A stretch of DNA of 64,000 nucleotides from Obrimoposthia wandeli. Lineage: Eukaryota. Under the pieces are notes generated by a model that saw only the letters and a program-made list of their open reading frames with translations, was not told the origin of the DNA and searched no databases. Position 1 is the stretch's first letter, and each line of letters opens with the position of its first letter. Location: the NCBI GenBank assembly GCA_977020255.1, contig CDROCS010003291.1, forward strand, positions 62,001 through 126,000. Reading direction: 5' to 3'. Of this stretch, positions 3,108-59,479 are shown piece by piece. Made by a program: the position numbers and the translations under genes.

Positions 3108-3800
3108 CAGTTAATCCTCGATATTCCAAACTTGTAAAAAATAATCAGTTTCGGATGGCAAGGTTTTTCTAAAAATTAACATAGATTCACATATGTACAT
3201 ATATTCATTCAATTATTTTCGACAAAATCATTCAATGTAGTTTGTCTCGGGTTTATCGATATTTTCTTTCATTTTGTTCAAATGGTTTCGTAGATCTGTA
3301 TGAAATTTTACAGCAATTTTTTTGATATAAATAATCGACAATAACTTCAATCGTATTGTACACATCTTTGACAGGAACTCCAGCTTCAACAATCATCAAC
3401 GTCATCATCACACATATTTCTAATTTTAATCGAAGAAATAAGTTGAATAATTTCTTTGTCAATGGATGTAGAATTTGCTTCACCATAAAGAATTATTTCC
3501 TTGAAGTTATGGTGACACTTAAAGCGATGTAGCCAGCCATTTGAATAGGCAAAATCACTAATACATAATTTTTTGGGAAACAAATTTGCCTTTTTAATGA
3601 TAATCTCGTCATTTATAAAGCCATTGTTAACATTCGTTAATCCAATCCAAGATGTGAGAGCAACTTCAAAACTTTCTTATAACTTGGATTTTGATTTTTA
3701 AAAAGTTATATTTCTCGTTTTTTAATATTTGATCTAACTTCTTTACAAATTCTTTGGATCATCAATGGTCGATCTTTCTTGAAAAAGTACAACCATTCTG
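3108..3800 (-). mobile_element. Tigger/pogo transposon relic (CENP-B HTH)
   Basis: FEVALTSW...IIKKANLFPKKL..DFAYSNGWLHRFKCHH; TA-CAGTTAATCCTCGATATTCC terminus at 3106. Confidence 0.8.
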
Positions 3801-20391: not shown

Positions 20392-21909
20392 CCTATCGAA
20401 TTTTAGTTATTATTCAAAATTCTCCAAACTACCATTGTAATTTTTAAAGTATAATGAAGTTCTTAAATCAAGTACAGTATACATATGGATGTTTTGACAC
20501 TAGATAAATACGATTTTCTTTAAAAGAGAACATTTTCAGCGTGATATGATGTTTTACAAGTTACAAATTTAAACATATCTTCATTGTTTCGTTCAATTCT
20601 TGCAGTTTTTGTCCTAACAAACCGATGAAATTTTCCGAATTGTTAGAGTCGGCAACAAAATTGACATTTCCTTAGTATGAGTTTGGTTAATTCCATTAGA
20701 AATCGTTTTTTATCCTTCAGCTTTTCAAAGGAAGTACTTGCCTTCTATCGTTTGGTTCTGCATGCCTTGACAATCGTAGAATGGACAAGTCACCGATGTG
20801 AAAAATGTTTTACTCACATAAATATCTCGGCTGAAGAAGGTTAGAAAGCCGTGATGTAAACTTTACTCGAAATCGTGTAACAGTTACTTGATTGGATTTG
20901 ACCAAGAACTAGAAACTCTCTCACGCAAACATGAGTGGGAAAATCAAATGATTTTCATATATTTAAATTGTAATTTGGGTTTAATTGAATATATATGAAA
21001 CAAAAAAATAATTTCAATTTTATTTAAAACATGTTTTTTTTAAAATAATTTAAATTAACGTTTTAAATTTAATTGTCAAATAATTGAACTAAAAATTTAT
21101 TTTATCAAATAAAAAAAGTTTTAAAATGTTTTTAAATACGCATTTGTTTTTCACAATTTTTTTCTCACACTTTTGTTGTTGTTATTATAGATGCAAAATA
21201 TCAAAAACAATAATAATGTATATTTTTTAAAATATCATGATTTAATTTAAACTCACTGAACTGCTTTTCATTTTTAAAATAAGTAAAATGGGATTTCTAG
21301 AGGTGTTAACACTCGAGGCAATGAACATGTCGATATATTTAAAACCTTTAACAAAAATAGAAAAATTAGGGACTTTTAACTAAGATAAGTAAAAATAGAT
21401 TCACTACATTTAAATTTGCTCATCTTGTATATTGGAAATTTTTGAATTTTGGTTATTTCCCACATTTATTTTTTATTGCAAATTTACACATCTTTGTTCA
21501 TAACAACTGGTAGGGTTTTCTCCCAATTATAATTCCCTTGTCTGTCGTCTACTTATGTGAGGATTCTCAGATCTAGTGACCATGAAGACATGTATAATGG
21601 CGTCTCATCTATAGTACCTCAGATTGATGCTCTTGTCAGTGACAAGCTGACATTTTATCACCCTCATGACGTTTTTTGAATTAACAATTTGTACATATAT
21701 ATGTATATTTGCAGTGTCGAATAATGGGGTTAACAGAGGAGAAATTATGATTTTTTGCTGATGTTAGGGTTAGGTTTTGTTAAAATTAAATAATTAGTTG
21801 AATTTATACTAAAATGAAAATCCTTAAAAGCAAGGTTGAAAATTAAATAAATTTTAATTTTAAAATCAAGTTAAATTATTAGGACTAAATTAGGAATAAA
21901 TATTAAGAG

Positions 21910-21945
21910 GACCACGAAGGTCGTGTATAATGTGTTGTATATAAG
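21910..21945 (+). promoter_or_regulatory. LTR promoter module 1 (GACCACGAAGGTCGTGT plus TATATAAG)
   Basis: Motif identical to that at 23121, with a TATA-like box about 15 bp downstream. Confidence 0.5.
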
Positions 21946-22250
21946 GTTAAAATTAACTAGTAAAAGTGCAAAAATAGCACTGTCAGAAAAAATTAATTAA
22001 CGAAGAAAATAGCAACGTCAGCGAAAAAAGAAAAACTAATTAAGAAGAAACTTGAGAAGAATTTAGCCAACGTAAAATACGCCAACGTCAGCAAAGGTAA
22101 GCACATTAGTGCGGTCGATTATTAATTACCTCTTATCTCCAGGTGCAACTTGCCTGTCCTATCCAGGTGAAAGCAGCGAGACTATTTAAGTCTGCTCACC
22201 AATTCAACAGGGTAGACGAAGAAAGTAAATTGCTAGTGACACGAGCAAAG

Positions 22251-22491
22251 TCTACATTAGAAGCAATCGGGAAAACAATCACGCGATCTCCAACAAGAGT
22301 AGATTCACTAGTCTACATTAGAAGCAATCGGGAAAACAATCACGCGATCTCCAACAAGAGTAGATTCACTAGTCTACATTAGAAGCAATCGGGAAAACAA
22401 TCACGCGATCTCCAACAAGAGTAGATTCTCTAGTCTACATTAGAAGCAATCGGGAAAACAATCACACGATCCCCAACAAGTGTAGATTCAC
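22251..22491 (+). repeat. Tandem repeat, 61-bp unit x ~4
   Basis: TCTACATTAGAAGCAATCGGGAAAACAATCAC... recurs at 22251, 22312, 22373 and 22434. Confidence 0.95.
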
Positions 22492-22736
22492 TGAGGAAAC
22501 TGCAAGGAAATCAGTGAGAAAAAAGAAATCTCAGAAGAAGAACCAAAAGTAAAATTTGGCGAACGAAACAATTTATTAATTCCAAGGAAGGAATCCAACG
22601 AGAACGTGAGCCGCATCTGACCGCGGAACCGAGAAACTACGAGACCGAATCGCAGTCGGACCAGAACCGGAACGGATACGGATCTTGACCGAACTCAGGC
22701 TTGGATTAGACGACTCCAGCACTATTGGTGAGAACG

Positions 22737-22850
22737 TAGACTCATTGAATAGAGTTTGATTTTAAAGTTATATCGTTGATAGACTCATTAATAGAGTTTG
22801 ATTTTTAAAGTTATATCGTTGATAGACTCATTTAATAGAGTTTGAATTTA
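22737..22850 (+). repeat. Tandem repeat, 43-bp unit x ~2.6
   Basis: TAGACTCATT(G)AATAGAGTTTGATTTTAAAGTTATATCGTTGA at 22737, 22780 and 22823. Confidence 0.9.
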
Positions 22851-23120
22851 AATAAAATTTCAATTTGCCTATTTTTAAGGAAGTTTTGAATCACCACCTT
22901 ATTGACATAAAATTAAAAGTTTACCCTCAAAAGTTAAAGTTTGACATTAGAATTAAATTGATTTGAAAAACCTGTTAGGTTTGAGAATTAAGAAAATTAA
23001 ATATTTTAGTCGATTAAATACTAAAATAAAAATCCTTGAAAGCAAGGTTGAAAATTAAATTAAAATATTAATTTTAGTTTTAGAATTAAAATTAGTGGAA
23101 TTTAGGGTAAAAATTAGGAG

Positions 23121-23158
23121 GACCACGAAGGTCGTGTATTATGCGAAAATGTATAAAA
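23121..23158 (+). promoter_or_regulatory. LTR promoter module 2 (GACCACGAAGGTCGTGT plus TATAAAA)
   Basis: Duplicate of module 1. A further strong TATATAAGG lies near 23350. Confidence 0.5.
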
Positions 23159-23493
23159 GTTAAATTAATTAACCCAAAAAGGACAATTTAGAATTAATTA
23201 AGAAAAGGGAAATCAATTAGGAACGTCAATCAAGAGACGTCAAGGTAAGCACATTGTAAGTGCAATAAGATTAATTGATTTTCAGAGACTCAGCAGAAGA
23301 AATTTTCAGACTATAAGTTCAGCTGTCATTTGATTGACAAGACTGCCCCTATATAAGGCAGAGTAAACCACAGAGAAAACAACAACGAAATCGACTACGA
23401 GTAATCAACTGGGCGGAGAACGACAGGTGAATTTTTGGTGGTTTTGGTCAGTATTGAAGTAATTTGTTTTTAGATCAATTGAATTAATTGAAA

Positions 23494-23880
23494 ATCCAAA
23501 GTCAAAGTGTATTCAAGGTGAATAAAAATAATTGCTGTGAATAAAAATAATTGCTTAATATCCAAAAAGTCAAAGTCAAAGTGTATTCAAGGTGAATAAA
23601 AATAATTGCTGTGAATAAAAATAATTGTTTAGTATCCAAAAAGTCAAAGTCAAAGTGTATTCAAGGTGAATAAAAATAATTGCTGTGAATAAAAATAATT
23701 GCTTAATATCCAAAAAGTCAAAGTCAAAGTGTATTCAAGGTGAATAAAAATAATTGCTGTGAATAAAAATAATTGCTTTAGTATCCAAAAAGTCAAAGTC
23801 AAAGTGTATTCAAGTGTCCAAAAAGTCAAAGTCAAAGTGTATTCAAGTGTCCAAAAAGTCAAAGTCAAAGTATATTCAAG
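23494..23880 (+). repeat. Higher-order tandem repeat: 74-bp unit x4 followed by 33-bp subunits
   Basis: GTGTATTCAAG anchor at 23507, 23581, 23655, 23729, 23804, 23837 and (variant) 23870. Confidence 0.92.
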
Positions 23881-24000
23881 CGTGTACTCAAACCTCCCAC
23901 AAGTAATAATCTCTGCTTCGAAGAAGATTCCGAAAGACCTACGGATCCTGCATCGGACGTCCCACTAGTCGCAGTAACTGGTAAGAACACCAACTAAACC

Positions 24001-24439
24001 ATTCATTGCCCCTAGTTGGCAATTAGGATAAATTCATTGCCCCTTGTTGGCAATTAGGTTGTTTAACATATTTTAAACATATTCATTGCCCCTAGCTGGC
24101 AATTAGGATTTCCGACTCTTTAACAAAATCATTGCCCCTAGTTGGTAATTAAGATCGGCCATTTATTCATTGTCCCCAGCGACAATTAGGAATCACACCC
24201 AGACTTTTTGCCCGTAAGATTCATTGTCCCTAGCTGACAATTAGGTTCCTTCATTGTCCCTAGTTGACAATTCGGATAAACACTCATTGTCCCTAGTTGA
24301 CAATTCGGTAAGACTCATTGTCCCTAGCTGACAATTCGGCTCGTTCATTGTCCATAGTTGACAATTAGGAGTAAGTTTTTCATTGTCATCTCGACAATTA
24401 GGTTTTTAGGAGACCCATTGTTCACAGTGGACAATTCGG
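24001..24439 (+). repeat. Array of 12 palindromic ~26-bp repeats (TTCATTGYCCCTAGYTGRCAATTMGG) separated by unique spacers of about 4-28 bp
   Basis: Read directly from the sequence. The dyad ATTGYC-N7-GRCAAT shows coordinated C-G versus T-A changes between copies. Confidence 0.92.
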
Positions 24440-25799
24440 GTCAAACACACACAGATAGAGTTAAGGAACCAAGAAACTTTAGCTAGAGATAAGAAGTAGG
24501 AGCGAAGAAATTTAAGAGAGTTGCGTTATAGATTAACCAACCTAAGTAAGAAGAACAAACCTAAAAGCTTAATCACCTGAACGTAAAATCGATACGTGGT
24601 TCATCCCCACTTCTTGTAGAGACTTACAGAAGTCCTTTAGGAATTTTATCATACTTTTTAGAAATACGTATATAAACGTATTGTTGTGTTAGTTACGTGA
24701 ATTACAAATAAACAATTTCCTACATTAGAACCAGTTGTTTTTACACCCTTCAGAATAAGAGGCATCGAATCAAATACCTTCAGATAGTACAAGAGATTAG
24801 GCAACCATAACACTAAGTAGGCCACGACCAACTTTAAGACCTGCTTCTATTCGAACTCACGTTGGGGCCCTCCGCACACAAGAGGATCTGTACAAGTCTC
24901 GTATAGAAACCCCAACACTGAAAAGGGATAGTTTCATAAATTAAGTTTGAGAAGCCCAGGCTTAGTTTAACCGAATACAATTACAGCGACATTGTCGATT
25001 CGATTCCGAATCTCTGATTGTTTATTAATGTAAAATTTCCATTATATTTTCTGCTATTTTAAAAAATTCGAAATTGTTACTGCCACGATTTAAGGTTAAT
25101 TCCATACAAACCAAACATTTCAATGTATTAAAATGTCTTTAGCATTTTAAAAATTAAATAAATCATACTTTAGAAATATGAAAATAAAAAGTTTTCAGTA
25201 AATTGTATTTTGATTAGGTAAAACATTTGAATCATTGGTAAATTTGTAAAAATATAGTCATTAAATCTGTTCACGTATAAGTCTCACTTTAAGCTTTTTT
25301 CAATTTAAAAGAGAAAGAGCTAAAATTAGAAACTGATAGAGTGCATATATCTTTGGATGTCAGTAATAATATAATCAGAGTAAAAAACATTAATTGGAAC
25401 ATAATATAATTTAAATTCAAATAGCACATCACCATGTAAATATCCTAAAACACTACTTTTCGCATTACCATCCAATAAAAATCATATTTAAACTAATAAA
25501 ACTGTAATGCTCTTAATTAACATAATAATTTAAAAAAAAACTCTATTGTTTATTATTATGTCCTAATTAATGGTTAATTATAGTCTTATTACAAACACAC
25601 TTCTTCACACAACAAATGGTCATCATCAAAGTGCATTTAAATAATTATAGGCACTGATTGGTTAATTTAAAATGAATTACTGTAATTTAAAATTTGCAGA
25701 ATCATAATACACTTTAAAGTACATTTGATCATAAATTATAGTTTGTGGTGGTTATCAATAGTGTGGCCTTATACATATATATGGTTCCAACCCATACGT

Positions 25800-25980
25800 C
25801 TTTTGGGGTGTATAATACGCCTTTCTTGTGCAGAAAATTAAAATGTACAACATACACCCGTCATTCAGAAATGTTTCTTATTATTTTTTGAATAAATATT
25901 AATATATCCTATGCAACAAAAATTAAGAAATTGTATTTTTTAAAATTTGAAGTACCAAACGATTTGCAAACAAAATTTTA
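25800..25980 (-). mobile_element. Second copy of the 20083-20391 relic
   Basis: NFVCKSFGTSN...IFCTRKAYY; nucleotide similarity to 20120-20330. Confidence 0.45.
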
Positions 25981-25992
25981 TAAGCCTTTGAG

Positions 25993-26198
25993 AATAAAGA
26001 TTTCCTACAACTAAACAGCGTTGTTACATTCCCACAACACCTAGACATAACAAACCTTCAGATAAGAATTGAGACAGGTGAGCACAACTTAAGTAGGTCA
26101 CAAACAACTGCAAGTCCTGCTGCTATAGAACTCATGTTGGGGGCCTCCGTCTGAAGATCTATATCTGAACCAGTAAGTTTCATATAGAAACCCCAACA
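25993..26198 (+). mobile_element. LTR 3' (U5) fragment of the same family
   Basis: AATAAAgatttcctaca...taagtagg...gaactcatgttggggg...tagaaaccccaaca matches 24700-24917 and 42364-42660. Confidence 0.75.
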
Positions 26199-26234
26199 CT
26201 ACATTGGCGGAAACCTTTTTAGTATATTGTGAAC

Positions 26235-26406
26235 AAAACTCTTTACACACCCCGCAATACATTAGCACAAAAAATATTCAGAACTGAAACTAAGTAAGTA
26301 AGATAAACCCAAAAAATAGGCCACATCCATCTGTAAGCCCTATTGCTACAGAACTCACGCTGGGGGCTTCCATACGAGAATATAGTTTCAAATAGAAAGC
26401 CCAACA
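26235..26406 (+). mobile_element. Second LTR 3' (U5) fragment
   Basis: tagcacaaaaaa..ttcaga..tgaaactaa..taggccacat.catctgtaagccctattg.tacagaactcac is nearly identical to 42515-42660. Confidence 0.8.
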
Positions 26407-30348: not shown

Positions 30349-30668
30349 CAATTTAACTTAATAATAAAACCCTTTTAAATTATATTTTAAAAGTATTTTA
30401 CAATTTAAGAATCCACTGATTAATTAGAAAGTGATTTGTTAGTTCATTATATTTTTGTTTGTATTTATTTCAGTTTCATTGTATTTCTTAACTATATAAT
30501 TAATTTAATTAACTATTCAATTTAACTTAATAATAAAACCCTTTTAAATTATATTTTAAAACTATTTTACAATTTAAGAATCCACTGATTAATTAGAAAG
30601 TGATTTGTTAGTTCATTATATTTTTGTTTGTATTTATTTCAGTTTCATTGTATTTGTTAACTATATAA
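30349..30668 (+). repeat. Recent direct duplication (~150 bp, period 169 bp)
   Basis: Near-identical copies starting CAATTTAACTTAATAATAAAACCC at 30349 and 30518. Confidence 0.92.
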
Positions 30669-37100: not shown

Positions 37101-37473
37101 TCTTTAGTTGTCAATAAGTCATATTAGTTAGATCATCTTTCAACAGGGCGGAGCACCAATTCTTTCAATCAAGTCAAAAAATGTCTTTTGGTAACAAATG
37201 AATTATTGGTCAGGGTTATGACAATCACCGACATACACGATCATCGAACCTGACTCATATTGACTTTTACGTTTGAGGCACATTGAAGTTACGTATGTAT
37301 TGGAGGTGGAAGCCGAGCACAATAGGATAAGATGTATCATAAGTCAAACGTATCAGAGTAAATTACACTAATTGTGATGTTCTGATCAGTCGGACTGACA
37401 AAATGAATTAATTTAATTTAAAATATATCTAATAGTCAGATTTTGGAGTTTACAACTGCAGGTTGTTTCAAAC

Positions 37474-37845
37474 CTGTTGCACGAAGGCGGCAATGGAGAA
37501 CCAGACGCAGTTGAAGAAGGTGAAGTCGCGCGTGACAGCAGCAGAATGGCCTGCAGATGGACCCGATGTCGAGGAGAAATGCTCATTGGCGGGTTGGCCG
37601 GAAGAGGCGGCTGAGTTGGCGCAAGTGCTGCCAGTCGTATCAGCAGCGGTACTCCACTCATAGGGACTGAGACGCGCGATTACGTAGAGGCCGCAGCTGA
37701 CGACGAGACAGGCTGCGATGTAGCAACTCCAAACGGGATATGAGAGTGGCCTCAGGAAGCTGAAGATCCCCCCCTTTTTGGGACCCGGTTTCTTGATCAT
37801 TACGCTGAGACCGAACATCACAAATGGCTCTGAGAAGTGCACTAC
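37474..37845 (-). CDS. iGluR exon (S1 end, M1, intracellular loop, M2 up to the Q/R site, 124 codons)
   Basis: Acceptor ctctcag|GTA, donor CAG|gtttga. Encodes FSEPFVMFGLSVMIKKP, the hydrophobic M1, RLSPYEW and FNCVWFSIAAFVQQ. Confidence 0.93.
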
Positions 37846-40800
37846 CTGAGAGTGCATGATATCGTCAGAGCACACATTTCCTCTAATCATTTCGTACCAA
37901 TATGAAATTAATTAAAATATAAAAACAAAAATTTCTCTAAAATATGAATAAATTTTTACTAAATATTGCTTCAAGGGAGGCCTGCAACTTTAACGCTCGG
38001 AATTGAATAAAACTTTGAGTATAGATAGATAAAAGTAAAATATTATAATTTCTCGAGACTTTACCGTGAAAGCTCAAAAGAAGTCTGTATTTCAATAAAT
38101 GAAACGCTAGGAAATCGTTTGGACTAAATATAATTATTTAATTGAAAAGAAAAGAAATGATAAATTATTTTAAGTATAATAATTCTGAAGTATATATTAG
38201 AATATATAATTTAACTTGTAACTTATGAAAAATCTAATATTTATAGAAAATTAAATTCATCTTATTACACAATTTATAATAAAATATAAAAACTTTGTTT
38301 TAAATTTGCTCTAAATGACAAAAATTAGAAAATGTCTTTGTCAGAATTTAAGATTTTCAAAAGTTAAAAGTTTAACGCTCTTATACTGAATTTAAAATCC
38401 AAATAAAATAAAGTGAAACTACAAAAATTCTAAAGGAATCCTGTTTTAATATTTCACAAACAACATGGGGGAGGACCTCCAATAGATTGGCATATAAATG
38501 TAGTTGTAAGAAATAATATGAAACATTCCGAAAAGTACAAAATAATTCTTAATTGGAAGAGTTTGTCTAAGACCATCTTCAGTTATGAAAAGATCCTATA
38601 ACTCGATTGTTTAGATTGTTAGTACACCTATACAATCAATAAAGAAAGATTAACGAGAGAGTTCAGACAGTGTAGTAGGGAAGGTGATTTTGTATGGATT
38701 ATTTCTCTTTCAAGAGGCTTTTATCCCATAAACTTATTAAAAAAAATTATATCAGAAATTAGTTTGAATTGACTCAGTGAATCAGTTGTTACATTTATGG
38801 AAATTAATTAATTATAAGTATGAAATATAAAGAGTAAACTGCTCCAAAACACAAGTGAAATATTATGTAAGATATTTCCATACCAAGTGAAATTAACATC
38901 GTAAAATATATTGGGATGCTTAAATCGTGCAAAATGGACCACACAATCATAACACAATGTGTGATCAAAGATAAAAACAATTTAAATTTAATGTCACAAG
39001 CGCTATGCTTTGTACTATGTTTCTTCACGTATTGGAAGGTAGTAAAATGTTGGCTTAAAATTATTTAAAAAAAAAGATTTTCAATATACATTTTTCTATA
39101 ATTCAATCCTTTGTAATTTAAAAAAGACTGTCTGAATTTTTTAATGTCTTTGTGTTCAAGTTTATACTATTTTTGAAGTGAAGTTAATAAAATATATACG
39201 TTTAATAAATTAACGTTTGAAATAAACTTCAGTATCATATACGTATAAATGAAAAAACAAAAGTACTTTAATTCCGAGAAATATTCTTAAAGTAAAGATA
39301 TGTGGTGTGTAAAAATACGAAAAGAAGTTTAACTATCGGTTGCAAATTGAAGTTATTGGAGATTGTTAAATTCAAGGTGAAACCAAATTTACAATTTATA
39401 GGGATTAATGATTGAAACTAAAAAAAATCTTCATAGTAGTTATTTTATGTGTCAAGAATTTAAAAAAAGTAAATTTACTATAAGCTAACCTGATATTTAT
39501 GATTTGCTTCATAATCGTTTAAAAGTGTACAAAAACACTTAGGTCATGCGAGGGGTTTTTTAGAAAGTTTTCCTATAAGTAAATTTAAAATTTTAAACAC
39601 GGGGTCATTGTTAATTAACTAAAATATTTGGAGGACGCCATTAACAATCAACGCTCAATTGTTTACTTTCTTCACAATTATTGCATTGTCACTGCTAAAT
39701 AACCTGCAGACTTGAAGCTGTATTTGGAGAGAAGGCAATAAAGAGAACCGCGGTCTATGACTGGGTGAGCCGAATAAAGGAAGGGTGTGAACCTTCATCG
39801 TCTTTGACAAATCGAAATGTTGAATCAGTCAAGGCTATGGAGGATGACAGAACATAGTTGTGAAACAGGCCTTGGTGTTGCAACAGTACACAAGATTTTA
39901 TACGAATATCTCGTGATGGGCAAATTAACTGATAACTACGGATGGAACCTGGCTGCTATATTACAATCCCAGGCCAAAAGACAAGTTACAGATGGCTTCG
40001 AAATGGAGACTCTGCCCTTGTCAAGATTATGGAAGTACCAAGTGCTGGGAAAGTAATAATATCAGTGTTTTGCGACTATTCTATCTACCAATGTAAGCTT
40101 TTAGGAGAGGTCCTAAGAAGACGATATGTGGAAAGCCTTCATACATCCCAATACTGAACAATGAACAGTAGCGTCTGTGGGAAGGAATATTGTCTCATCC
40201 TGCGTATTCCCCTGACTTAGTACTTTTTTCTCATTTGAAATATCCACTGTGAGAAATACGTTTTCCAGATCCGTAGAGGTTTGACGGAGATTTGCAAACT
40301 CCCGCACGAAGGTGTGAAAACTTTGAGGTATGTAAAGTGAATACATTGAACAGTTTACTCTTATAGACTTTTAACATAATATATTTTCAATGGGATTTTA
40401 CTATTAATAATACATTGCAATATTTAGAGTGGATACATAATTCTGTAATATAATACAGATTTTATTAATACCAGAAACTAAATTAGACGATTAAATATAA
40501 GTAAATTAGAGAGATCTAGAAAGATAATTCGGACATTTATTTACTGTACATGTTCTGAGACTGTTTTAAAATCTGACACGTGTTGTAGTCATTCACACAA
40601 AGATTAAGTTTGTATGATAAGAAACTGAATCACTAGTTGGTAAGTAGTCTAAAAGAAATTGAATAGAAATGCTTCCATAAGACTTATTTTCAATATGAAT
40701 TTTCCTGATTTTAATATTGTGACTTTTTACTGATTAATGTTTTCTAATTAAATACTGTAAAATTTCTTTATATACACTCAAGATACTAAAATATTTGAGG

Positions 40801-43800
40801 ATTATGACCAATGTCCCTTCTGTTCAGAGAAGCTTACTTAAGAACTTTGGAAAAATAACGTAAAACAAATCTGAATGAATCTGCAAATAATAACTGAGGA
40901 ATAAATGTCTAAGTCTACAATGTATACATAGCAAATATGCTTTTAAAACCGTGAATTAAGTATTATATTAATATTAACTTATGTGTTGTTTATAGACGAC
41001 GAAGAAATCGGCAAGTTCATTGAATGATTAAATTAGAACATGTATAATATCTCCGGGCTTTTATGCTTTTCTTGTTGTATCCAAATGGACTTAAACAAAG
41101 GCACACGAATAGCACCAAGAATTATAGGTTCTATTAAACTCGTGTATGTGTAAATTTCATTGCATGTGTTAGAATTGGAATTGTATAATTATTAAAATAG
41201 AATTAATTATAAATAGAGGAAATAAAACTTTGAAATAAGGTTAAAAAGGAATGAATAAATTAATAATTTTTTAAAATTAAAACAAAATGGAAATTGATAA
41301 GATCGGAATAAGTTAAGGACCTTGAGAGGTCGTGTGTTGTGTAAGTATATAAGATAATTTATATTATTAAGAAGGCCCTAAAAATATATATAATTTGAAG
41401 AAGTATTCGCAACTGGTAAAACTCAATTAAGGATAGCAAAAGTGATTTAATTTCTTGAGAACGAGACAGCAGTCTACCGACTAGAAAACTGAAGGTATAA
41501 TTAATTGAAAAATTCCATTTACTAATTACTTACCAGAACGGCGAGCGAAATTTATTCATTCTCAGGAATTTTGCATCAATCGAAAACAAGTTATAACAGC
41601 ATACATAACATGAGAGTATAAAAAGAGAAAACAAAAAGCTCAAAAAGGAAAAAAAAAAGAAGAAAGTCTTACAATCGTTAGATGAACAACCCAGGCCAAA
41701 ATTAGAAGATCGACCAGTGTTTGAATTGACCGAGGTAAGGCACGAAAACGACGTTAGAGAATTTAAGATAATTACTGATTATCCAGGAAGATTGACCAGA
41801 TCGAACAAGCGAGGACCACCAGATATTGGAGGAAATCGCTGGACAGAGATAGATCCAACTAAGCGGATCTTTTGAGGACGGAAGCTTGTGACAGCCGGAC
41901 TACGAGAATCGATCGGACGGAAGCGAGTATCAATAACCGCAGATAAATCTAGGTAAGTAAATTAGAAACATTGAAAAAGAAAGTTATATACTTTGTCAGC
42001 TTAAAGTAAAAGAAAGTTACATACTTTGTTAGTTTAAAGTAAAAGAAAGTTATATCCTTTATTAGTTTAAAGTAAAAGAAAGCTACATACTTTATTAGTT
42101 TAAAGTAAAGAAAGTAAACATATTTTATCAATTGAAATTAGCAAACATTGGAAAAGAAAGTAAATTTATCTTAAATCATTTGGGGTTTGACGAGTCAAAG
42201 TTAAATAGGAAACTAACAACTAGACAAGAGCGTAAAACTCGATCTCTAACCTACTAGACAGAAAATTAAAATCGATACGTTAAGGACATCCTGATTTATG
42301 TGAAATTGATTAAGTGTCATAGGATTAGTTGTCTGTAATTTTTAGCAACATAGTTTAGTGTGAAATAAAGAATAAACGTTTTCTACAAACAAGTAGCGTT
42401 ACCTTGAATTAACCCACCACGAATCAGGACGATATCAACTCCATTGTACGCCACACTACAATAAGGACACCTTGTAATACCTTGTGCACACAACTATGTA
42501 CACAATCCACCATACACTAGCACAAAAAACCTTCAGACTTGAAACTAAATTAAGTAGGATAAAACCTAATTAGGCCACATACATCTGTAAGCCCTATTGT
42601 TACAGAACTCACATTGGGGGCCTCCATACAAGGATCTAGTTTCAAATAGAAACCCCAACACATGCATTTGACAATGTTGGAGTATTAGATGCCTTAAACA
42701 CTTGTTTTTTTTATTTTCAAAATCATCTTTTGCAAACCCGATAATTGTGGCTAGTGATTTATCTAAGATAACTTTAACAATATTTTGTTTCAATTTGAAT
42801 TGAATCAATTTATTAACTAGTTTAAAATTTTCAAATACATTTGGTAACATTGTTTTAAAAGTTTTTCAGATGCTTTCACTATCTGGAAAAAGAAAATCAT
42901 TGGGTATTGAATATATTTTCCGCTCACTTTTAAAGAATCTGTTTTCTATCTTGAATGTAATTATTAGATACTTAATTTGTTTATCCATAATTCCTGAAAC
43001 CACATATTTTCCTTTATTAGGTTCAGTCGGAAATCCACATTGTTCTGCAATAATCTAATCATTAAAAACTATTTCAAAATTATCCCCTTGTCCTGCAATT
43101 TGAATTCGATTCTCTTTATTTAAAAAGATTGTGAAATTATTCCCTGGCTTAATACGCGCCAAATCTAATTATCCCATATAAAATTGTAAAGTTACAGCAG
43201 CTACTTTATCAACTTCTTGTTGAGTAATATATTCAATTTTAGTTCCACTTTGAATTGATAGATGATAGTTATTGAAAGCAAATTCAGTTAATTTAGCTTC
43301 CCAATTTCCAGGAAGAAGTATTGGATTTTCTAAATAAAATATAAATTTGCTAGCATCATTATCAGGTCTTGTTTTTGGACAGATATTGCTAGGTAATACC
43401 ATATAAAAATCCTTCCTTCTATTTGCGTTGCTAAAATTCAACTAGGTTTAGAATATCCATGCCATTTTACTAAATATTGTTTATTCATTCAACGACCTTT
43501 AGTTTCTAAAATTTTTGTATTCTATACATTTCAGGTTTATCAACCACTTGTAATTCTTGATGATAAAATTTACCTTGTAAAACCTCTTCATTTTTATCTT
43601 TCAAAATACACATTATCGGATTTTGACTATTGCTGATATCATGAATTTGAAAAACTTACTATTTTTTTTAATATTCTCACATAATCACTAATCTTATACT
43701 TTGGTTTACTCTTTTTTTTCCTTTTTATTTCTACTCATCCAAATTTCCTTTGCATTTTTATTTGAAACTTCAAAGGTCTTTTGCCATCTAAACTAGAATA

Positions 43801-46800
43801 TTCAGAATGGTTGTTTGCAGTAATAATTTTTGGTAAAACATCAATCAATTTTTATTACCTTGTATTGTAAAGTAATTTTTTATTCTTTCTCTTAAAGTTC
43901 GGGTAAATCTTTCAAATAAAGCTGCCTTGCATTGAGAATATACAGAATAGTGATTAATATTGTTTGATTTAAATAAAGATTTAACATGTTTGTCGTAAAA
44001 TTCTTTACCTTCATCAGTTTGTATATTTTCCGGTAATACATCAAGCATGTTATTTATTGCTTTACTCATTTCAATGCCTGTTTTATTTTTTACACCTTCT
44101 GCTCTTGAAAATCTACTAAAAACATATATGCAAGTTAAAATATACTTACAATTATTATTTGTTGATGAATATGGAATCATTTCCATCAAATCCAATTGCT
44201 ATAATGCATTATGGCCGTTTGTTTTATATGATTTTGTTGAAAATATCTTTTTCATCGGTTAGTTTAAGCTGTAAGCTAATTGATTTTTCAACCATTTCTG
44301 AGTCTCTTGTTTGCTGATTTTTATTTTCTTTGCTAATTTTGATACACCAGCATAACCAGTCGAATGTTTTGGGTCGAACCATATCAACAGCATCTTTTCC
44401 ATTACAACACGTTGAATTAAACAACAAAAAAGCTTTTTGTTGAGAACAACGAAGAAATAAAGTATACAATGCTACAATATACTTTGAATTGTTTTATTTT
44501 GTTTATATTGATTGATATTAAAATAATGAACTTCTCTTTCCAATTATGCTAGAATTGGGGCTATAATTGATAAAATACCACCAGATTGCTGAATAAATAT
44601 TTTACGTTTACCTAAATTAGATTTGGTATTTATTAAACGAGAAAACTGTCGTTCATACTTTTACAAAGACTTTGCTTTATCGCCATCATTAAGTTCACCA
44701 AATATTATTTTTATCAATACTCTAACCATATCATCAAATACAAAGGTTGGAAAAGATTTTAAAATTCAGATTCTACGATTGTTAGGCGACTTTAACAATA
44801 CATTAATATGTGGATTTGATTTTCTTTGAAACAAAACATTGGAAATAAATCTATTAACTTCTCTTCTTTCATGTGGAACAACAACCATTTTAAAAGCCAT
44901 TTTTGATTTACCTTTTTGAAACATTTGTTTATAAACAGTATAACCAATTGAGTTAAATAAATCTATAGATAAAATCATCATTACATTCTTGTGTAAAATC
45001 AATGAATAAATAACCATGTGTTTTCTTTCTAGCAACAAAATCAATAATGGTTTGATCACGTGGATTTTTAAATAATACCAAATATTGTACATTGATATTA
45101 CGTGTTCTATGAGCTCCTCCTCGATAAAATAAATTTAGTATGATAAATTTAACAGTGACTTTCCCACGACGAGCAATTTTAGTAAAAAGACTGTTAAAAT
45201 CTGCTTATTTATTAGCTTCCTGATACAAATCATCAACCACAATTACATAACCCTTTTTCAATCTGCTTGACCAATTCTGATCAAAACCATCAATTACTTT
45301 AATATTTTTTAATTTACAAAATGTTTGTTGAGTCAAACCTGCTTCTCCACTACCTCCTTGGTGCCAATAAATCCTTTTAAAAGATTGTTTAAATAATTTA
45401 CTTTTTAACAAATTACAAACAAAGAGTGTTTTTCCACTACCAGAAGGTCCTACCATCTGGTAAACTGCACTATTTTTTCAAAAGTATAATAATCTATTTA
45501 TGAAAAATATATTGTTTATGCTTCTTTCATATTTAACAATATATTAAATAATTTTGTTTTTTCTTCTTGTATAATATTTTAAAGTAAAACAAGAATATCA
45601 GTAAGTTAAAGAAAAATATAAGAAAAAGTCATAAAAATATATTAAAAAAACATTGGTGAGCAGACATTAATTTCCAGATTGTGCTGATTTGGGCTTCTTC
45701 ATTCTATTTGAATCCTTGTATTGATAATTCAACCAATCATTCTTGACCATCTTTAAAGTCTACTTTCTTTCCAAAACAGTTGAAAAAGTCTTCGCATTTT
45801 TTAAACTAGAGGGGTTTCTCCACTGTATACTTTGTAATCATTTTTTTAAAACATTTAGTTCAAATCATCTACATCTGATATTGCAATATCAGAAAGCTTG
45901 TAATTGAATTTGGCCACACTTATAGATACTGGTAGTGAATAGGTAAATATCCAACTGTTTTTTAATGTATTCATTCTATAATTAAAACATTCAAATGACT
46001 TTTTGTATTACATTTTGAGAAATGAAATGAATTTCTTTATATTAGGTTTATATATATTTAACTTCAACCAATCATATACATTCTTCAATATATATTATTT
46101 TAGATTTTAATTGATTTTAATTGAAGTTTGTCATTTAATGATTTAATACCTAAAATGATAGTCTTTCCAGTAGAGAAAAGATTTACACATAATGGGTTAA
46201 ACTTAATTAATTGAAGAGCAGGAAATAATTCTGGTTTGTACATACATGCTACTTTACGTGATAGCTTATGTAAATTTATTGATTTTCTAAGATTTATAGC
46301 TATTGTGATATATTGAATTTTATCAATAATAATCTTCAATGGTGTTGTTATAAATAACAATGGTGTCTTGCACCCCATAATTCTGCATCTACCAGTCTTG
46401 AATATCATAATAGTATAATCTGTAGTTTTGATTATATAATGTTTAGGTTTCCATGTGAAACATCTTGGAAAACAGTTCCTTTATAATTGATGTTGGTAAT
46501 CATTATTAACAGAAATAGATTGTAATCATAATCTTGTATCTATATATTCAGATAACTAAATCAATGAAACTTCCATTTATTGGCTCTATCTCCATGGTTA
46601 ATGATATACTGGTTCCATCAACAACGAAACAACAGTCTACGCCATCACAGTTAACATTACAACATCGATCAGAACAGTCGGGTTCTTTTGTTTTATGTAA
46701 ACTATACCTATTTTACCGTTTAAATGTAACTCATAATAATTGTCATATTATCATGAAACTATATTATAGGCTTAGACATAATGGCACTAATTACTATGTA

Positions 46801-49800
46801 TGTCCTCATTGTAATATATTTACAATTGTTAATTATGAAAATTTTTATAAGCTACATAAGAATCATTTATGTGATTTTAAAAGAAAAAAGTGTTCATATG
46901 CTCCGATTGGTAAGCCATCACTTAAGCGTAAAAATATATATCCAGCACTAATATGCCTACTAAATACGTATGTCAGGTTGGTTTTGGAGTAAGGATTGAT
47001 TTACATAATAGTCATATCATAATCACACATGATTTTATTGATAATGATGTGACTAAATTTTTTGTTCCTGATAGTATTAAACAGGAAATTGAGAATGTTG
47101 TTGATAGGATGGGTAAAGCTAAATTACAATATGGAGCGATTGTTTTATTTTAAAAGGATAATGGCGAAATGGAACAATGGTATTTTTCGTATAAAACTAT
47201 TGAGTATAATAATGATAGTTTGACTGACATATCTCAAACGTTAGACGAGAAAATTTCCATCTATAGTGAATTGAGTAGTGGATGACGAGTGTTGCGTATA
47301 TTGCTAATAACATTTACTTTAACAAAATATTGAGTGATAGTAGTTATATATATATATTCCTCTTGCACTATCTCGCACAAAATCAGTTGTAAACGTACGA
47401 AACTATGATTCATTCGGGTTTTTCTTTGCAATTCTCACATAACGTAATGAAATAATTGAGCGTTGTTATCGTGTTTCACATTATATTCCATATTTGAAAA
47501 TCTTCACGTATGATCCTAGTCAAATGCCAATGAATCTAATGGGATTTTGCCTACATTCGAAAAGCAAAAATACTTTCGATAAATGTTTTTAGTTATAATA
47601 TTGATGATGATTTTCAATGTAACAATGAAGATATTTTTAAACATCCTTTTGTTTATATTATATTTAAAAATGGTAATCAATTTGATGAAACTATTAATTT
47701 GCTACTGATAGAAAATGATAGCACATTTCCTTACTTATGAGTGATAAACTTAGATCATTCATTAAATATTGATTGTGATAACATTCCAATACGAATTCAG
47801 AGTAAGTGGTGTTCTTAATGCTTGCATGGTTTTATGAAGCAGAGTGCATATGATAAACATATTTAATTATATGCATTATATTTATTATCCGGATTTGTCA
47901 AAAACTATTGCTGTACAGTTTTTAGTATATGCAGATTTTGAATCATTGTTAGCACCGCATCATTTACATAAGCAGATTCATTTACCACCTGTTTAAAACA
48001 CCAACAATTAATAATTATTATCAGTTTGTAAGTAAAACATATATCCAGGATTTTCTGCAAAAATTACAAGATTTGTTAGAGGATAACGTTAAACGTTGGT
48101 TTGATGCTAATGCTCGTAGAAATATGCAAATAGTTAATGCTAATTGGCGTGCATATAATACATAAAAAACGTGTTATTTATGTAAAAAGGTGAATGAAAA
48201 ACTTATTCGTGATCATGATCTACATATAGCACATGTAATCTTTATCGTAGAGTGAGCAAAATTCCAACTTTACCAGTATTATTCCATATGTGCATGCCAG
48301 TATTATTCTATATTCCAGTACATGCCACATCTAAATTTAAATCATGGAATATATCATGTGTGCCATTATCGACAGAGAAGTTCATGGCTCTTATTGTAAG
48401 AACAAAATTCGGCATTTTACGATTTATTGATTCATATCAATTTATGAGTGATAGCTTGGCTCTTTTAGTTAAGATGATGCCTGATCTACTTTTATAGAGC
48501 CAAGAATTTCCAACTAGTCAATTGAAATCAAAAGGAATATTTCCATATAACTATCCTACCTCAGAAAACATTTTGAATGGTATTCTACCCCTGTGACTGA
48601 TTTAGACATGGAAATGTTTGATACATTAAATTGTAAAACTTTGTGTGATTATATGTTAGTTTATTTAAAATTAGATTTATGTTTGCTTGCAGATGTTTTT
48701 GAAGCATTTAGACAAAAAGAATTAGAAGAAGACGGTTTAGATCCTGTTCATTTCTTTTCTGCTCCTGGCTTATCATGGGCTAGTGCTTTGAAAACATTAG
48801 ATTATGATGTAAAATTGCTGAAAGATCCTGAAATGTATATATTTTTTAAGAGTGGTATTCGTTTGTAAATAAGCATCATGTATAGTCTTCTGAAACTGTA
48901 GATTTATTGTACATAGATGTAAATAACTTATATGGTTGGGCTCTTTCGCAACAACTACCACATAGTAGCTTTAAATGGATTGATGATGAATATTATCTTA
49001 TGTGCTTGCTGTTTGAGATTGATGAGGATGATGATGAATATGATTATGTATTGGAAGTAGATATGGATATAACTGCAGATATTCATGATAAATTGGATGA
49101 TTTAACTATAGCTTCAATTAAACAGTGTCCATCAAATAGTAAAGTAGAAAAGTTACTCCTTACTCATGAACCAAAGAAGAATTATATTATTCATTTACGT
49201 ATCCTTCATTTTTATGCTTATCTTGGAGTAAATGTTGTTGTGTACATCGAGCTATTCAGTTTAAACAAGCTAGTGTTTTTAAGAAGTATATAGACTACAA
49301 TACGGAAAAATGATCAGAGGCTGTTAAATCAAAAAATTCTTTTTAAAATAATTTTTATAAACTTAAAAACTGTAGTTTGTTTGCAAAAACAATAGAAAAT
49401 TTGAGGAAGCGGTTAAATGTAAGAATTTGTAACAACTCAAAGAAATTAGCATGTTTAAGTTCTAAACCTATATTCAAGAGATCTCGTGTTGTAGTTGATG
49501 ATTTGGTTGTTGTTTTAATGAATAAATAAATGGTTTATCTTGATAGACCAATCTATATAGGACAGGCAATTCTTGATTTATCTAAATTGCGTATGTATCA
49601 GTTGAAATATGAAGAACTGAAGAGATATCAAAGAATGTTTAATTGCAGTATTAAAATAGTAGCTGATGATACTGACTCATTTTTTCCAGAATGTGTTCGT
49701 GTTAACTTAGATAATCAATTGCTACCTAAAATGATCTCTGATGATTTGTTGGATACATCAAATTATCCAGATTGCCATCCTTTATATATATATTTTTTAA

Positions 49801-59250: not shown

Positions 59251-59479
59251 CTGGAAAATTAAAAAAAGGTAAAAATAACCCTTAATTATTTTTTTCAATT
59301 CTAAAAAAACAGAAAAATTTACCCCGACATTGACAGGTTTGCTATCTTTCAAAGTTCATGAAATCTACGTTAGACTCTCGTATATTGCGTCCTAATATAA
59401 ATAAATTTAATTTTAGGTTAAAGAAATTAGGCGACTTGAATTATTTTTCCTACATTTGTTTTATACAAAACATAAGTTT

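What the first reader, a model, noticed from the sequence alone, without database searches (positions are those of the whole stretch)
24001..24439. CRISPR-like array of palindromic repeats with unique spacers inside an animal LTR
Seen: 12 copies of TTCATTGYCCCTAGYTGRCAATTMGG separated by non-repeating spacers of about 4-28 bp, which differs from the head-to-tail minisatellites nearby. The dyad ATTGYC-N7-GRCAAT co-varies: copies 1-3 have ATTGCC/GGCAAT and most of copies 5-12 have ATTGTC/GACAAT. A second overlapping dyad, CCTAGTTG-R-CAATTAGG, is also present. Repeats decay toward the distal end. The array lies between the LTR TATA boxes and the AATAAA near 24707, so it should be transcribed. Inference: it is either a multi-hairpin RNA scaffold (packaging, export, small-RNA processing or protein sponge) or a DNA array for a dimeric factor, since it contains Sox-like CATTGT/ACAAT and homeodomain-like TAATTG cores. 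The co-variation could also simply reflect descent from two variant units.
Basis: partly seen in the sequence, partly recalled or inferred. Interest (0 to 1): 0.75.

Follow-up and report, generated by a model that had tools for sequence, protein, structure and literature searches.

The report
Palindromic repeat array in solo LTR
Twelve copies of a 26-base palindromic motif with unrelated spacers really do sit in the variable part of a retrotransposon long terminal repeat, and they are most likely a cluster of binding sites for a host regulatory protein, so this is an ordinary kind of feature in an unusual form and is not CRISPR-like.

Summary
There are 12 copies of ATTGYC-loop(5-7)-GRCAAT at 24001-24440 and none elsewhere in the 64 kb. 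All 72 arm-pair cells are complementary: one double change (C-G in copies 1-4, T-A in copies 5-12) and two G·T cells. The arms are more conserved than the loops. The long spacers are no more alike than shuffled sequence. Copies 6-11 form a head-to-tail array with a 30-33 bp period and a 94-bp higher-order duplication.

The array lies in the unit-specific, minisatellite-filled middle of an LTR-like unit (22973-24917). The unit has TG...CA ends and perfect 4-bp target-site duplications, carries no coding sequence, and lies antisense to a glutamate-receptor gene. "CRISPR-like" is only a visual analogy. "Should be transcribed" is not secure: eight AATAAA hexamers precede the array, and a TATA box sits 38 nt before the terminal AATAAA, which would place the array in U3.

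Best reading (0.4): a homotypic cluster of dyad-symmetric protein-binding sites (enhancer or insulator type) that grew by tandem duplication. Published analogues are the Sirevirus palindromic LTR motifs and the 12 Su(Hw) sites of gypsy. An RNA-hairpin array and a neutral minisatellite remain open.

The parts
24001..24440 (+). Array of 12 copies of a ~26-nt unit (TC + 6-nt arm + 5-7-nt loop + 6-nt arm + TMGG), all in the same orientation
   Evidence: start-to-start spacings 31,49,46,38,54,30,33,31,30,35,35
24001..24154 (+). Block 1: copies 1-4, C-G-type arms (ATTGCC/GGCAAT; copy 4 has GGTAAT); spacers 5, 23, 20 nt
   Evidence: TRF period 49, 78% matches
24165..24440 (+). Block 2: copies 5-12, T-A-type arms (ATTGTC/GACAAT; copy 12 has ATTGTT)
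24214..24403 (+). Tight head-to-tail sub-array (copies 6-11), period 30-33 bp, with a 94-bp three-unit higher-order duplication (63 nt at 90% identity)
   Evidence: periods 30 and 94; family D4
22973..24917 (+). LTR-like unit B, which holds the array: TGTTAGG...CCCCAACA termini, shared 5' and 3' modules, and a unit-specific middle filled with minisatellites (74 bp x4.3, 33 bp x3, then the array)
21762..22972 (+). LTR-like unit A. It has the 5' module (79% identical to B over 185 bp) and its own minisatellites (61 bp x4, 43 bp x2.7) but lacks the 3' module. It abuts B and shares one target-site duplication with it.
21758..21761 (.). Left copy of the 4-bp target-site duplication CTGA flanking A+B
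24918..24921 (.). Right copy of the 4-bp target-site duplication CTGA flanking A+B
23497..23880 (+). Minisatellites of 74 bp and 33 bp upstream of the array. They carry eight AATAAA hexamers (23521-23762).
24586..24917 (+). Conserved 3' module of the LTR family: shared AAAATCGATACGT segment, TATA-like string at 24669, AATAAA at 24707, and the terminal GTTGGGG...CCCCAACA inverted repeat. Candidate promoter/R/U5.
41167..42660 (+). Comparator LTR-like unit C. It has the same termini and modules, its own ~31-bp minisatellite (41965-42110), no palindromic array, and a perfect 4-bp duplication CATG (41163-41166 / 42661-42664).
25980..26406 (+). Two 5'-truncated pieces of the same LTR family's 3' module in tandem (about 25980-26200 and 26196-26406)

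Best explanation
What it is (about 0.85 confidence). The array is a lineage-specific expansion of a 26-nt dyad-symmetric motif in the hypervariable, tandem-repeat-prone middle of a long terminal repeat. The LTR is a solo or compound LTR of an unclassified retrotransposon family. It has no coding sequence and lies antisense to an ionotropic glutamate receptor gene of an AT-rich animal genome.

How it most likely worked (0.4, inferred). In the active element the units were DNA recognition sites for a host sequence-specific protein. That protein would either bind as a dimer across the two arms or recognise the whole 26-nt unit. Tandem duplication of one to three units multiplied the sites into a homotypic cluster lying about 230-670 bp upstream of the TATA (24669) and AATAAA (24707) pair. 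The cluster would then act as a U3 enhancer or insulator-type module for the element's promoter. Selection kept the arms while the loops and spacers drifted.

Shown: the anatomy, the complementarity of the arms, arms more conserved than loops and spacers, and the LTR setting. Inferred: protein binding, U3 position and regulatory role.
For: - The array is real and clustered: 10 hits against 0.7 expected.
- Arm columns are invariant in 8 of 12 cases, loop columns in 0 of 7 (Fisher p = 0.013).
- The 28-column units average 78% pairwise identity. The long spacers are no more alike than shuffles (0.38 against 0.40) and match nothing else in the window. The units were therefore kept while the spacing sequence was free.
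- The only two columns that differ consistently between copies 1-4 and 5-12 are the two partners of one arm pair. Selection for two-fold symmetry predicts this.
- LTR identity rests on TGTTAG...CCCCAACA termini and perfect 4-bp duplications at two independent insertions. The 5' and 3' modules are shared by units A, B, C and two fragments.
- Each unit fills its middle with its own tandem repeats. U3 is known as the variable, regulatory part of LTRs (PMC10794571).
- A TATA box at 24669, 38 nt before the AATAAA at 24707, together with eight earlier AATAAA hexamers, favours a short R with the array in U3.
- Published analogues: plant Sirevirus LTRs carry 8-14 copies of element-specific palindromic motifs clustered upstream of the TATA box (PMC2829016). 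The gypsy element carries 12 Su(Hw) sites in 340 bp (PMC2374998).
Against: - No binding protein is identified. The Su(Hw) consensus is absent. A strict HMG-type consensus hits the array once (memory-based). The C/T difference between the blocks falls in the arm core, so one factor may not read both blocks.
- Two copies keep perfect arms but have loops of 5 and 6 nt instead of 7. A rigid dimer would tolerate that poorly and a hairpin would tolerate it well.
- Both single-arm changes are G·T on the + strand, which is compatible with RNA pairing.
- The U3/R/U5 bounds are not mapped. Conserved TATA-like strings also lie far upstream (23152, 23350).
- Only one copy of the array was available, and the co-variation is a single event.
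Confidence: 0.4

Rival explanations
1. Neutral minisatellite with a palindromic core. The LTR's middle is simply prone to slippage and template switching, and a unit that happens to be a palindrome was duplicated. The arms stay complementary because mutations in quasi-palindromes are copied from one arm to the other by intrastrand template switching. Loops mutate faster because they are single-stranded in such intermediates. The array has no function.
For: - All three LTR units carry different, apparently arbitrary tandem repeats in the same region.
- Copies 6-11 are plain head-to-tail duplicates with a 94-bp higher-order unit.
- The double change is one event.
- LTRs and UTRs of transposable elements are well-known seedbeds of tandem repeats (PMC9659126).
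Against: - Templated correction explains complementarity within a copy. It does not explain why 8 of 12 arm columns are identical across all 12 copies while the long spacers are as dissimilar as shuffled sequence.
- Under neutral decay of a 46-49-bp period, units and spacers should diverge alike.
Confidence: 0.3
2. RNA hairpin array. The array is transcribed, either in a long R/leader or as U3 in the 3' end of the genomic RNA, and folds into up to 12 small stem-loops. These bind a protein (packaging, export or stability) or are processed into small RNAs.
For: - Every copy folds on its own into the 6-bp stem, at -3.6 to -5.7 kcal/mol (-9.1 for copy 12).
- All 72 of 72 cells are paired, and the only single-arm changes are G·U on the + strand.
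- Loop length varies (5-7 nt) while the stems stay intact.
- U3 of a 3' LTR is part of the genomic RNA under either layout.
- The + strand is A-rich, as sense strands of retroelements usually are.
Against: - The stems are short and AU-rich. The whole-array fold pairs different copies with each other and is even more stable on the minus strand (z = -3.8 on +, -5.3 on -), which any palindromic repeat would give.
- No Rfam family matches, even at E = 1.
- Eight AATAAA hexamers lie between the upstream TATA boxes and the array.
- Two G·U cells are expected by chance about 6% of the time (my estimate).
- The second dyad shows no covariation.
Confidence: 0.2
3. A CRISPR-like adaptive array whose spacers record foreign sequence.
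For: Only the visual pattern of repeat, spacer, repeat.
Against: - The setting is a eukaryotic gene, with no cas-like ORFs and no ORF longer than 150 aa within 10-40 kb.
- Spacers are 4-29 nt and variable in length. Half the array is head-to-tail duplication with a higher-order repeat.
- The long spacers match nothing else in the window.
Confidence: 0.01

Closest known systems
Palindromic repeated motifs (RMs) of plant Sirevirus (Ty1/copia) LTRs (Bousios et al. 2010, PMC2829016)
   Same: - An element-specific short palindrome with dyad symmetry.
- 8-14 copies clustered over 300-500 bp inside the LTR, upstream of a TATA box.
- High identity among copies, with varying intervening sequence.
- Proposed, but not proven, to be cis-regulatory.
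   Different: - Sirevirus RMs are 10-20 nt with 0-5 intervening bases, are mostly built on a CGG-CCG signature, and mark CpG islands. Here the arms are AT-rich, the loop is 5-7 nt, and the conserved unit is 26 nt with asymmetric flanks.
- The host here is an animal.
- The element's superfamily is unknown because no coding region is present.
Su(Hw) insulator of the Drosophila gypsy element (PMC2374998)
   Same: - Twelve degenerate copies of one protein-binding motif packed into 340 bp (here 440 bp).
- The copies are separated by variable AT-rich spacers, in non-coding sequence of an insect-type LTR element.
- It is a model for how such an array can work as a homotypic binding-site cluster.
   Different: - The Su(Hw) consensus quoted in that paper is absent from the array. 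The window holds 17 hits with at most 1 mismatch against 17 expected, and none lies in the array.
- The gypsy sites are not palindromes.
- They lie in the 5' untranslated region downstream of the LTR, not inside the LTR.
Tandem repeats and minisatellites seeded in LTRs and UTRs of retrotransposons (reviewed in PMC9659126; PMC7004042)
   Same: Variable, lineage-specific tandem arrays in the non-coding parts of LTR elements. Units A, B and C here each carry different ones.
   Different: Ordinary arrays duplicate the whole period. Here a conserved 26-nt unit is separated in half of the array by unrelated spacers of 10-29 nt.
CRISPR arrays
   Same: Partly palindromic repeats alternating with non-repeating spacers, to the eye.
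   Different: - The host is eukaryotic and there are no cas genes.
- Spacers are far too short and irregular.
- There is internal higher-order duplication.
- The array sits inside a mobile-element LTR.

Membership tests
LTR of an LTR retrotransposon (solo LTR) | Termini 5'-TG...CA-3' with a short terminal inverted repeat | tested here: met
   The A+B compound and unit C start with TGTTAG and end with CCCCAACA. Two further fragments end the same way.
LTR of an LTR retrotransposon (solo LTR) | Short (4-6 bp) target-site duplication directly flanking the unit | tested here: met
   CATG flanks unit C on both sides and CTGA flanks A+B on both sides. B alone has none.
LTR of an LTR retrotransposon (solo LTR) | A second identical LTR, with PBS, PPT and gag-pol between them, in at least some copies of the family | not testable with these tools
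   The window has no paired LTR longer than 150 nt, no ORF longer than 150 aa within 10-40 kb, and no reverse-transcriptase piece was seen. Other genomic copies were not fetched.
LTR of an LTR retrotransposon (solo LTR) | Promoter and polyadenylation signals defining U3/R/U5 | tested here: inconclusive
   TATA-like strings lie at 23152, 23350 and 24669 and AATAAA at 24707, but eight more AATAAA hexamers lie at 23521-23762. Such strings occur about 2.6-2.8 times per kb in this AT-rich window.
CRISPR array | Repeats of fixed length separated by unique spacers of similar length, next to cas genes in a prokaryotic or viral genome | tested here: not met
   Spacers are 4-29 nt and periods 30-54 bp, with a 94-bp higher-order duplication. 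The neighbours are animal glutamate-receptor exons and eukaryotic transposon remnants.
gypsy-type Su(Hw) insulator | Cluster of sites matching the Su(Hw) consensus given in PMC2374998 | tested here: not met
   The array has no match with at most 1 mismatch. The window total equals the chance expectation.
gypsy-type Su(Hw) insulator | Location in the 5' untranslated region downstream of the 5' LTR | tested here: not met
   The array lies inside the TG...CA-bounded unit, 477 bp before its 3' end.
Sirevirus-type palindromic repeated motifs | At least 8 copies of an element-specific palindrome clustered within the LTR upstream of a TATA box | tested here: met
   There are 12 copies in 440 bp, ending 229 bp before the TATA-like string at 24669. 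Whether that TATA is the promoter is unproven.
Sirevirus-type palindromic repeated motifs | CGG-CCG core signature; the element is a plant Ty1/copia Sirevirus | tested here: not met
   The arms are ATTGYC/GRCAAT. The host gene is an animal-type ionotropic glutamate receptor. The element's superfamily is unknown.
Structured RNA family (Rfam) | Match to a curated covariance model | tested here: not met
   No hit at gathering score over the whole window and no hit at E up to 1 over 21700-25000.
Plain minisatellite | Head-to-tail copies in which the whole period is repeated | tested here: inconclusive
   This is met for copies 6-11 (period 30-33, 81% matches). It is not met for copies 1-6, whose spacers are unrelated.

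The most novel reading that the evidence does not exclude
The array is a transcribed module of up to twelve small stem-loops, with conserved stems that tolerate G·U pairs and variable loop length, carried in the RNA of an animal LTR retroelement. It would serve as a multivalent protein-binding scaffold, for example for packaging, export or stability. No described retroelement RNA element has this form.
Probability: 0.15. Interest if true: 0.7.

Novelty: new member of a known kind. Interest (0 to 1): 0.3.

Why it matters
If the units are binding sites, this would be an animal counterpart of the palindromic motif clusters so far described in plant Sirevirus LTRs. It would also be a second architecture, beside the gypsy Su(Hw) cluster, by which a retroelement builds a dense homotypic site array through tandem duplication. 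Dispersed as solo LTRs in introns, such arrays could hand ready-made enhancer or insulator modules to host genes; here the host gene is a glutamate receptor. If the array is neutral, it is still a clear example of a palindrome-cored minisatellite arising in the hypervariable part of an LTR. On the evidence in hand it is a curiosity, not a surprise.

Tried and rejected
- **CRISPR reading:** rejected on anatomy and context.
- **Su(Hw) sites:** the consensus from PMC2374998 is absent.
- **Known RNA families and tRNAs:** none found.
- **Second overlapping dyad:** 76.6% paired and no covariation, so dropped.
- **Spacers derived from elsewhere:** the four inter-dyad intervals of 19 nt or more have no match in the window at 20% or fewer mismatches. 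Long spacers are no more alike than shuffles.
- **Foldback or MITE insertion:** rejected, because the asymmetric flanks (TC...TMGG) show that all 12 units have the same orientation.
- **HMG/Sox-type sites:** a strict 7-letter consensus hit the array once and is not enriched in any LTR unit. By eye I also compared the units with remembered consensus sites of NFI, RFX, C/EBP and TALE/homeodomain factors. None fits all 12 copies with the right spacing. These comparisons are memory-based and untested, and I write out no letters.
- **Similar GC-containing palindromic repeats in units A and C:** only AT-rich low-complexity palindromes were found.
- **Conserved splice-donor-like GGTRAG before each unit's last tandem array:** the motif is enriched in the LTR units, but the three mid-regions did not align in register, so no intron model is claimed.
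- **Host species:** one exact-protein look-up with a receptor exon ORF found nothing. The large protein searches were not spent on this.
- **Literature search for the unit's letters:** 0 papers.

Full report
**1. The observation**

Reading 23400-25100 and locating the dyads by script gives 12 units. Their left arms start at 24005, 24036, 24085, 24131, 24169, 24223, 24253, 24286, 24317, 24347, 24382 and 24417. Each unit is TC, a 6-nt arm, a loop of 7 nt (6 nt in copy 5, 5 nt in copy 11), the complementary 6-nt arm, and TAGG or TCGG.

The pattern ATTGYC-N7-GRCAAT with at most 1 mismatch occurs 10 times in the window against 0.7 expected. No shuffle out of 100 reaches 10. All hits lie in this 435-bp stretch. 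Spacers outside the conserved unit are 5, 23, 20, 12, 29, 4, 7, 5, 4, 9 and 11 nt. The array is therefore real and far beyond chance.

**2. Internal anatomy**

On the alignment of the 12 units (A3), all 72 arm-pair cells are standard pairs.
- Three pairs never vary.
- One pair is C-G in copies 1-4 and T-A in copies 5-12.
- Two cells are G·T, in copy 4 and copy 12.
- The two partner columns of the changed pair are the only columns that differ consistently between the two contiguous blocks. By my estimate, the chance that two fixed changes fall on partner positions and stay complementary is about 1-2%. It is a single event and counts once.

Arm columns are invariant in 8 of 12 cases, loop columns in 0 of 7 (Fisher p = 0.013). 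The 28-column units average 78% pairwise identity. The five long spacers are no more alike than shuffled versions (0.38 against 0.40), and none matches anything else in the window.

Copies 6-11, by contrast, form a head-to-tail array of period 30-33 bp with a 94-bp three-unit higher-order duplication, 63 nt of it at 90% identity. The array therefore grew by tandem duplication. Its older half has kept the units while losing any likeness between the spacers.

**3. Context**

The window is 72% A+T, has no ORF above 157 aa, and carries exons of an ionotropic glutamate receptor on the minus strand. Pfam gives Lig_chan-Glu_bd at E = 3e-21 (52365-52721) and Lig_chan at E = 7e-9 (37471-37911). The channel's M3 signature was not found in the window. 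The array may therefore lie in a long intron or beyond a truncated gene, and I cannot tell which.

The array lies in an LTR-like unit, B (22973-24917).
- B starts TGTTAGG and ends CCCCAACA.
- A related unit A (21762-22972) abuts it. A shares the first ~200 bp with B (79% over 185 bp) but lacks the 3' module.
- The compound A+B is flanked by a perfect CTGA duplication.
- A third unit, C (41167-42660), has the same termini and is flanked by a perfect CATG duplication.
- Two 5'-truncated pieces of the 3' module lie at about 25980-26200 and 26196-26406.
- All five pieces are on the + strand, antisense to the receptor gene.

TG...CA ends, 4-bp duplications at two independent insertions, and shared terminal modules make the LTR reading sound. 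There is no paired LTR and no gag-pol in the window. These are therefore solo or compound LTRs of an unclassified family. How A and B came to share one duplication is unexplained. Possible origins are an LTR with an old internal duplication or a rearranged nested insertion.

Each unit fills its middle with its own tandem repeats:
- A: 61 bp x4 and 43 bp x2.7.
- B: 74 bp x4.3, 33 bp x3, and the palindromic array.
- C: about 31 bp x5.

The array thus occupies the family's hypervariable, repeat-prone segment.

**4. Is it transcribed?**

TATA-like strings do lie at 23152 and 23350. However, eight AATAAA hexamers (23521-23762, inside the 74-bp repeats) come before the array, and another TATA-like string lies at 24669, 38 nt before the AATAAA at 24707. 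Such strings occur 2.6-2.8 times per kb in this window.

A short R starting near 24700 is the usual retroelement layout. That is general knowledge, not something tested here. It would put the array in U3, 229-668 bp upstream of that TATA. It would also fit the pattern of conserved ends and a variable middle (U3 is the variable, regulatory part; PMC10794571). The other layout needs an R of more than 1.3 kb. I favour U3 at roughly 60:40, but this is inference. Even then, the U3 of a 3' LTR is part of the genomic RNA.

**5. Folding**

Each unit folds alone into its 6-bp stem, at -3.6 to -5.7 kcal/mol as RNA (-9.1 for copy 12) and -0.7 to -4.7 with DNA parameters. The whole array folds better than shuffles on both strands (z = -3.8 on +, -5.3 on -), but it does so by pairing different copies with each other, as any palindromic repeat must. 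This says little. No Rfam family matches.

**6. Mechanism**

Three readings survive.

(a) DNA binding-site cluster (0.4). Conserved symmetric arms, free spacers, multiplication by duplication, the position in the LTR's regulatory segment, and two published precedents all point this way.

(b) Neutral palindrome-cored minisatellite (0.3). This is the base rate for this LTR segment, and templated correction within quasi-palindromes could explain the coupled change. It does not explain why the arms are the same across all copies while the long spacers are unrelated.

(c) RNA hairpin array (0.2). Intact stems with loops of 5-7 nt, and the two G·U cells on the + strand, are friendlier to a hairpin than to a rigid dimer site. 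By my estimate the two G·U cells have about a 6% chance expectation, and transcription is unproven.

The CRISPR analogy is rejected (0.01). The remaining 0.09 is left for readings not considered here.

**7. Comparison with what is known**

The nearest published thing is the palindromic 'repeated motif' of plant Sirevirus LTRs. There, 8-14 copies per LTR of an element-specific dyad-symmetric motif are clustered over 300-500 bp upstream of a conserved TATA box. They were proposed to be cis-regulatory but remain untested (PMC2829016). The array here shares that architecture. It does not share the CGG-CCG signature, the short spacing, the plant host, or any demonstrable superfamily.

The gypsy insulator, with 12 Su(Hw) sites in 340 bp (PMC2374998), is a working model for such a cluster. 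Its consensus is absent here, and it lies outside the LTR.

My searches found no animal LTR with a comparable palindromic array. These were few, word-based searches, so absence is weak evidence.

**8. Limits, steps left out, and a slip**

Only one copy of the array exists in the data I could use. I did not scan the public contig collections with the array's or the LTR's letters. The step is referred. The host species was not identified (one search found nothing, and the large protein searches were not spent on it).

I used the consensus lines printed by TRF and MAFFT for nothing.

Searches used generic TATA-like and splice-like patterns from general knowledge. My working notes recalled some factor consensus strings. 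The results that depend on them are marked as such and carry little weight.

**9. Verdict**

This is a real, well-defined array and an unusual-looking member of an ordinary class: repeated cis motifs or minisatellites in the variable part of an LTR. Novelty: new member of a known kind. Interest: 0.3.

Noticed in passing
window 43172-49802: A Polinton/Maverick-like stretch, fragmentary. Pfam gives an integrase-core hit (rve, E = 9e-5, below the cutoff) and an A32-like P-loop ATPase hit (weak). By eye only, with no Pfam hit, there are protein-primed family-B polymerase motifs. All of these genes exist only as stop-bounded pieces of about 80-160 aa. The polymerase-like frame is in at least four pieces. 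The kinds of break were not resolved or counted further.
   Followed up: partly
window 46103-46480 (-): A stop-bounded ORF of 126 aa inside the Polinton-like stretch matches the TATA-binding-protein domain (Pfam PF00352, E = 1.6e-13, 50.7 bits against a cutoff of 22.9). A TBP-like gene carried by, or captured next to, a virus-like element would merit a look of its own.
   Followed up: no
window 37471-37911, 52365-52721, 55463-55879, 58885-59355 (all -): Exons of an ionotropic glutamate receptor (kainate/AMPA-like by eye); Pfam supports the first two. All five LTR-like pieces in the window are on the + strand, antisense to this gene.
   Followed up: partly
window 22096, 22727, 23244, 23980, 41734, 41952: GGTRAG strings, which resemble 5' splice sites, occur twice in each of LTR units A, B and C. 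The units hold 7 of the window's 19 matches in 4.65 kb, where about 1.4 would be expected. In B and C a TTTTTAG lies about 25-50 nt before the terminal AATAAA. This may mean that LTR transcripts are spliced, with the unit-specific tandem arrays in an intron. The mid-regions did not align in register, so this is only a lead.
   Followed up: partly
window 21909-21925 and 23120-23136 (variant near 41318-41334): A conserved GC-containing palindrome (GGACC-N4-5-GGTC, followed by GTGT) lies about 150 bp into each LTR unit, just before a conserved TATA-like string at about +178. Its function is unknown.
   Followed up: no
window 21762-24917: Units A and B share one 4-bp target-site duplication, yet their common 5' modules are only 79% identical and A lacks the 3' module. 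This is either a compound or rearranged LTR or an LTR with an old internal duplication. Unexplained.
   Followed up: partly
window 25980-26406: Two 5'-truncated copies of the LTR family's 3' module lie head to tail. The second is 81% identical to the end of unit C.
   Followed up: no
window 30349-30668: Two tandem copies of a 151-nt segment, 99% identical, with a 169-bp period.
   Followed up: no
window 3389-3676 (-); 39808-40053 (+); 51801-52046 (+): Remnants of DNA transposons. One is a Tc5/pogo-type HTH domain (Pfam E = 1e-10). Two pieces look mariner-like by eye, but Pfam did not confirm them.
   Followed up: partly
window 41965-42110: The ~31-bp minisatellite of unit C also has a small AT-rich quasi-palindromic core (10 nt, 90% complementary) in each copy. 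This hints that palindromic cores may recur in this LTR family's tandem arrays.
   Followed up: no
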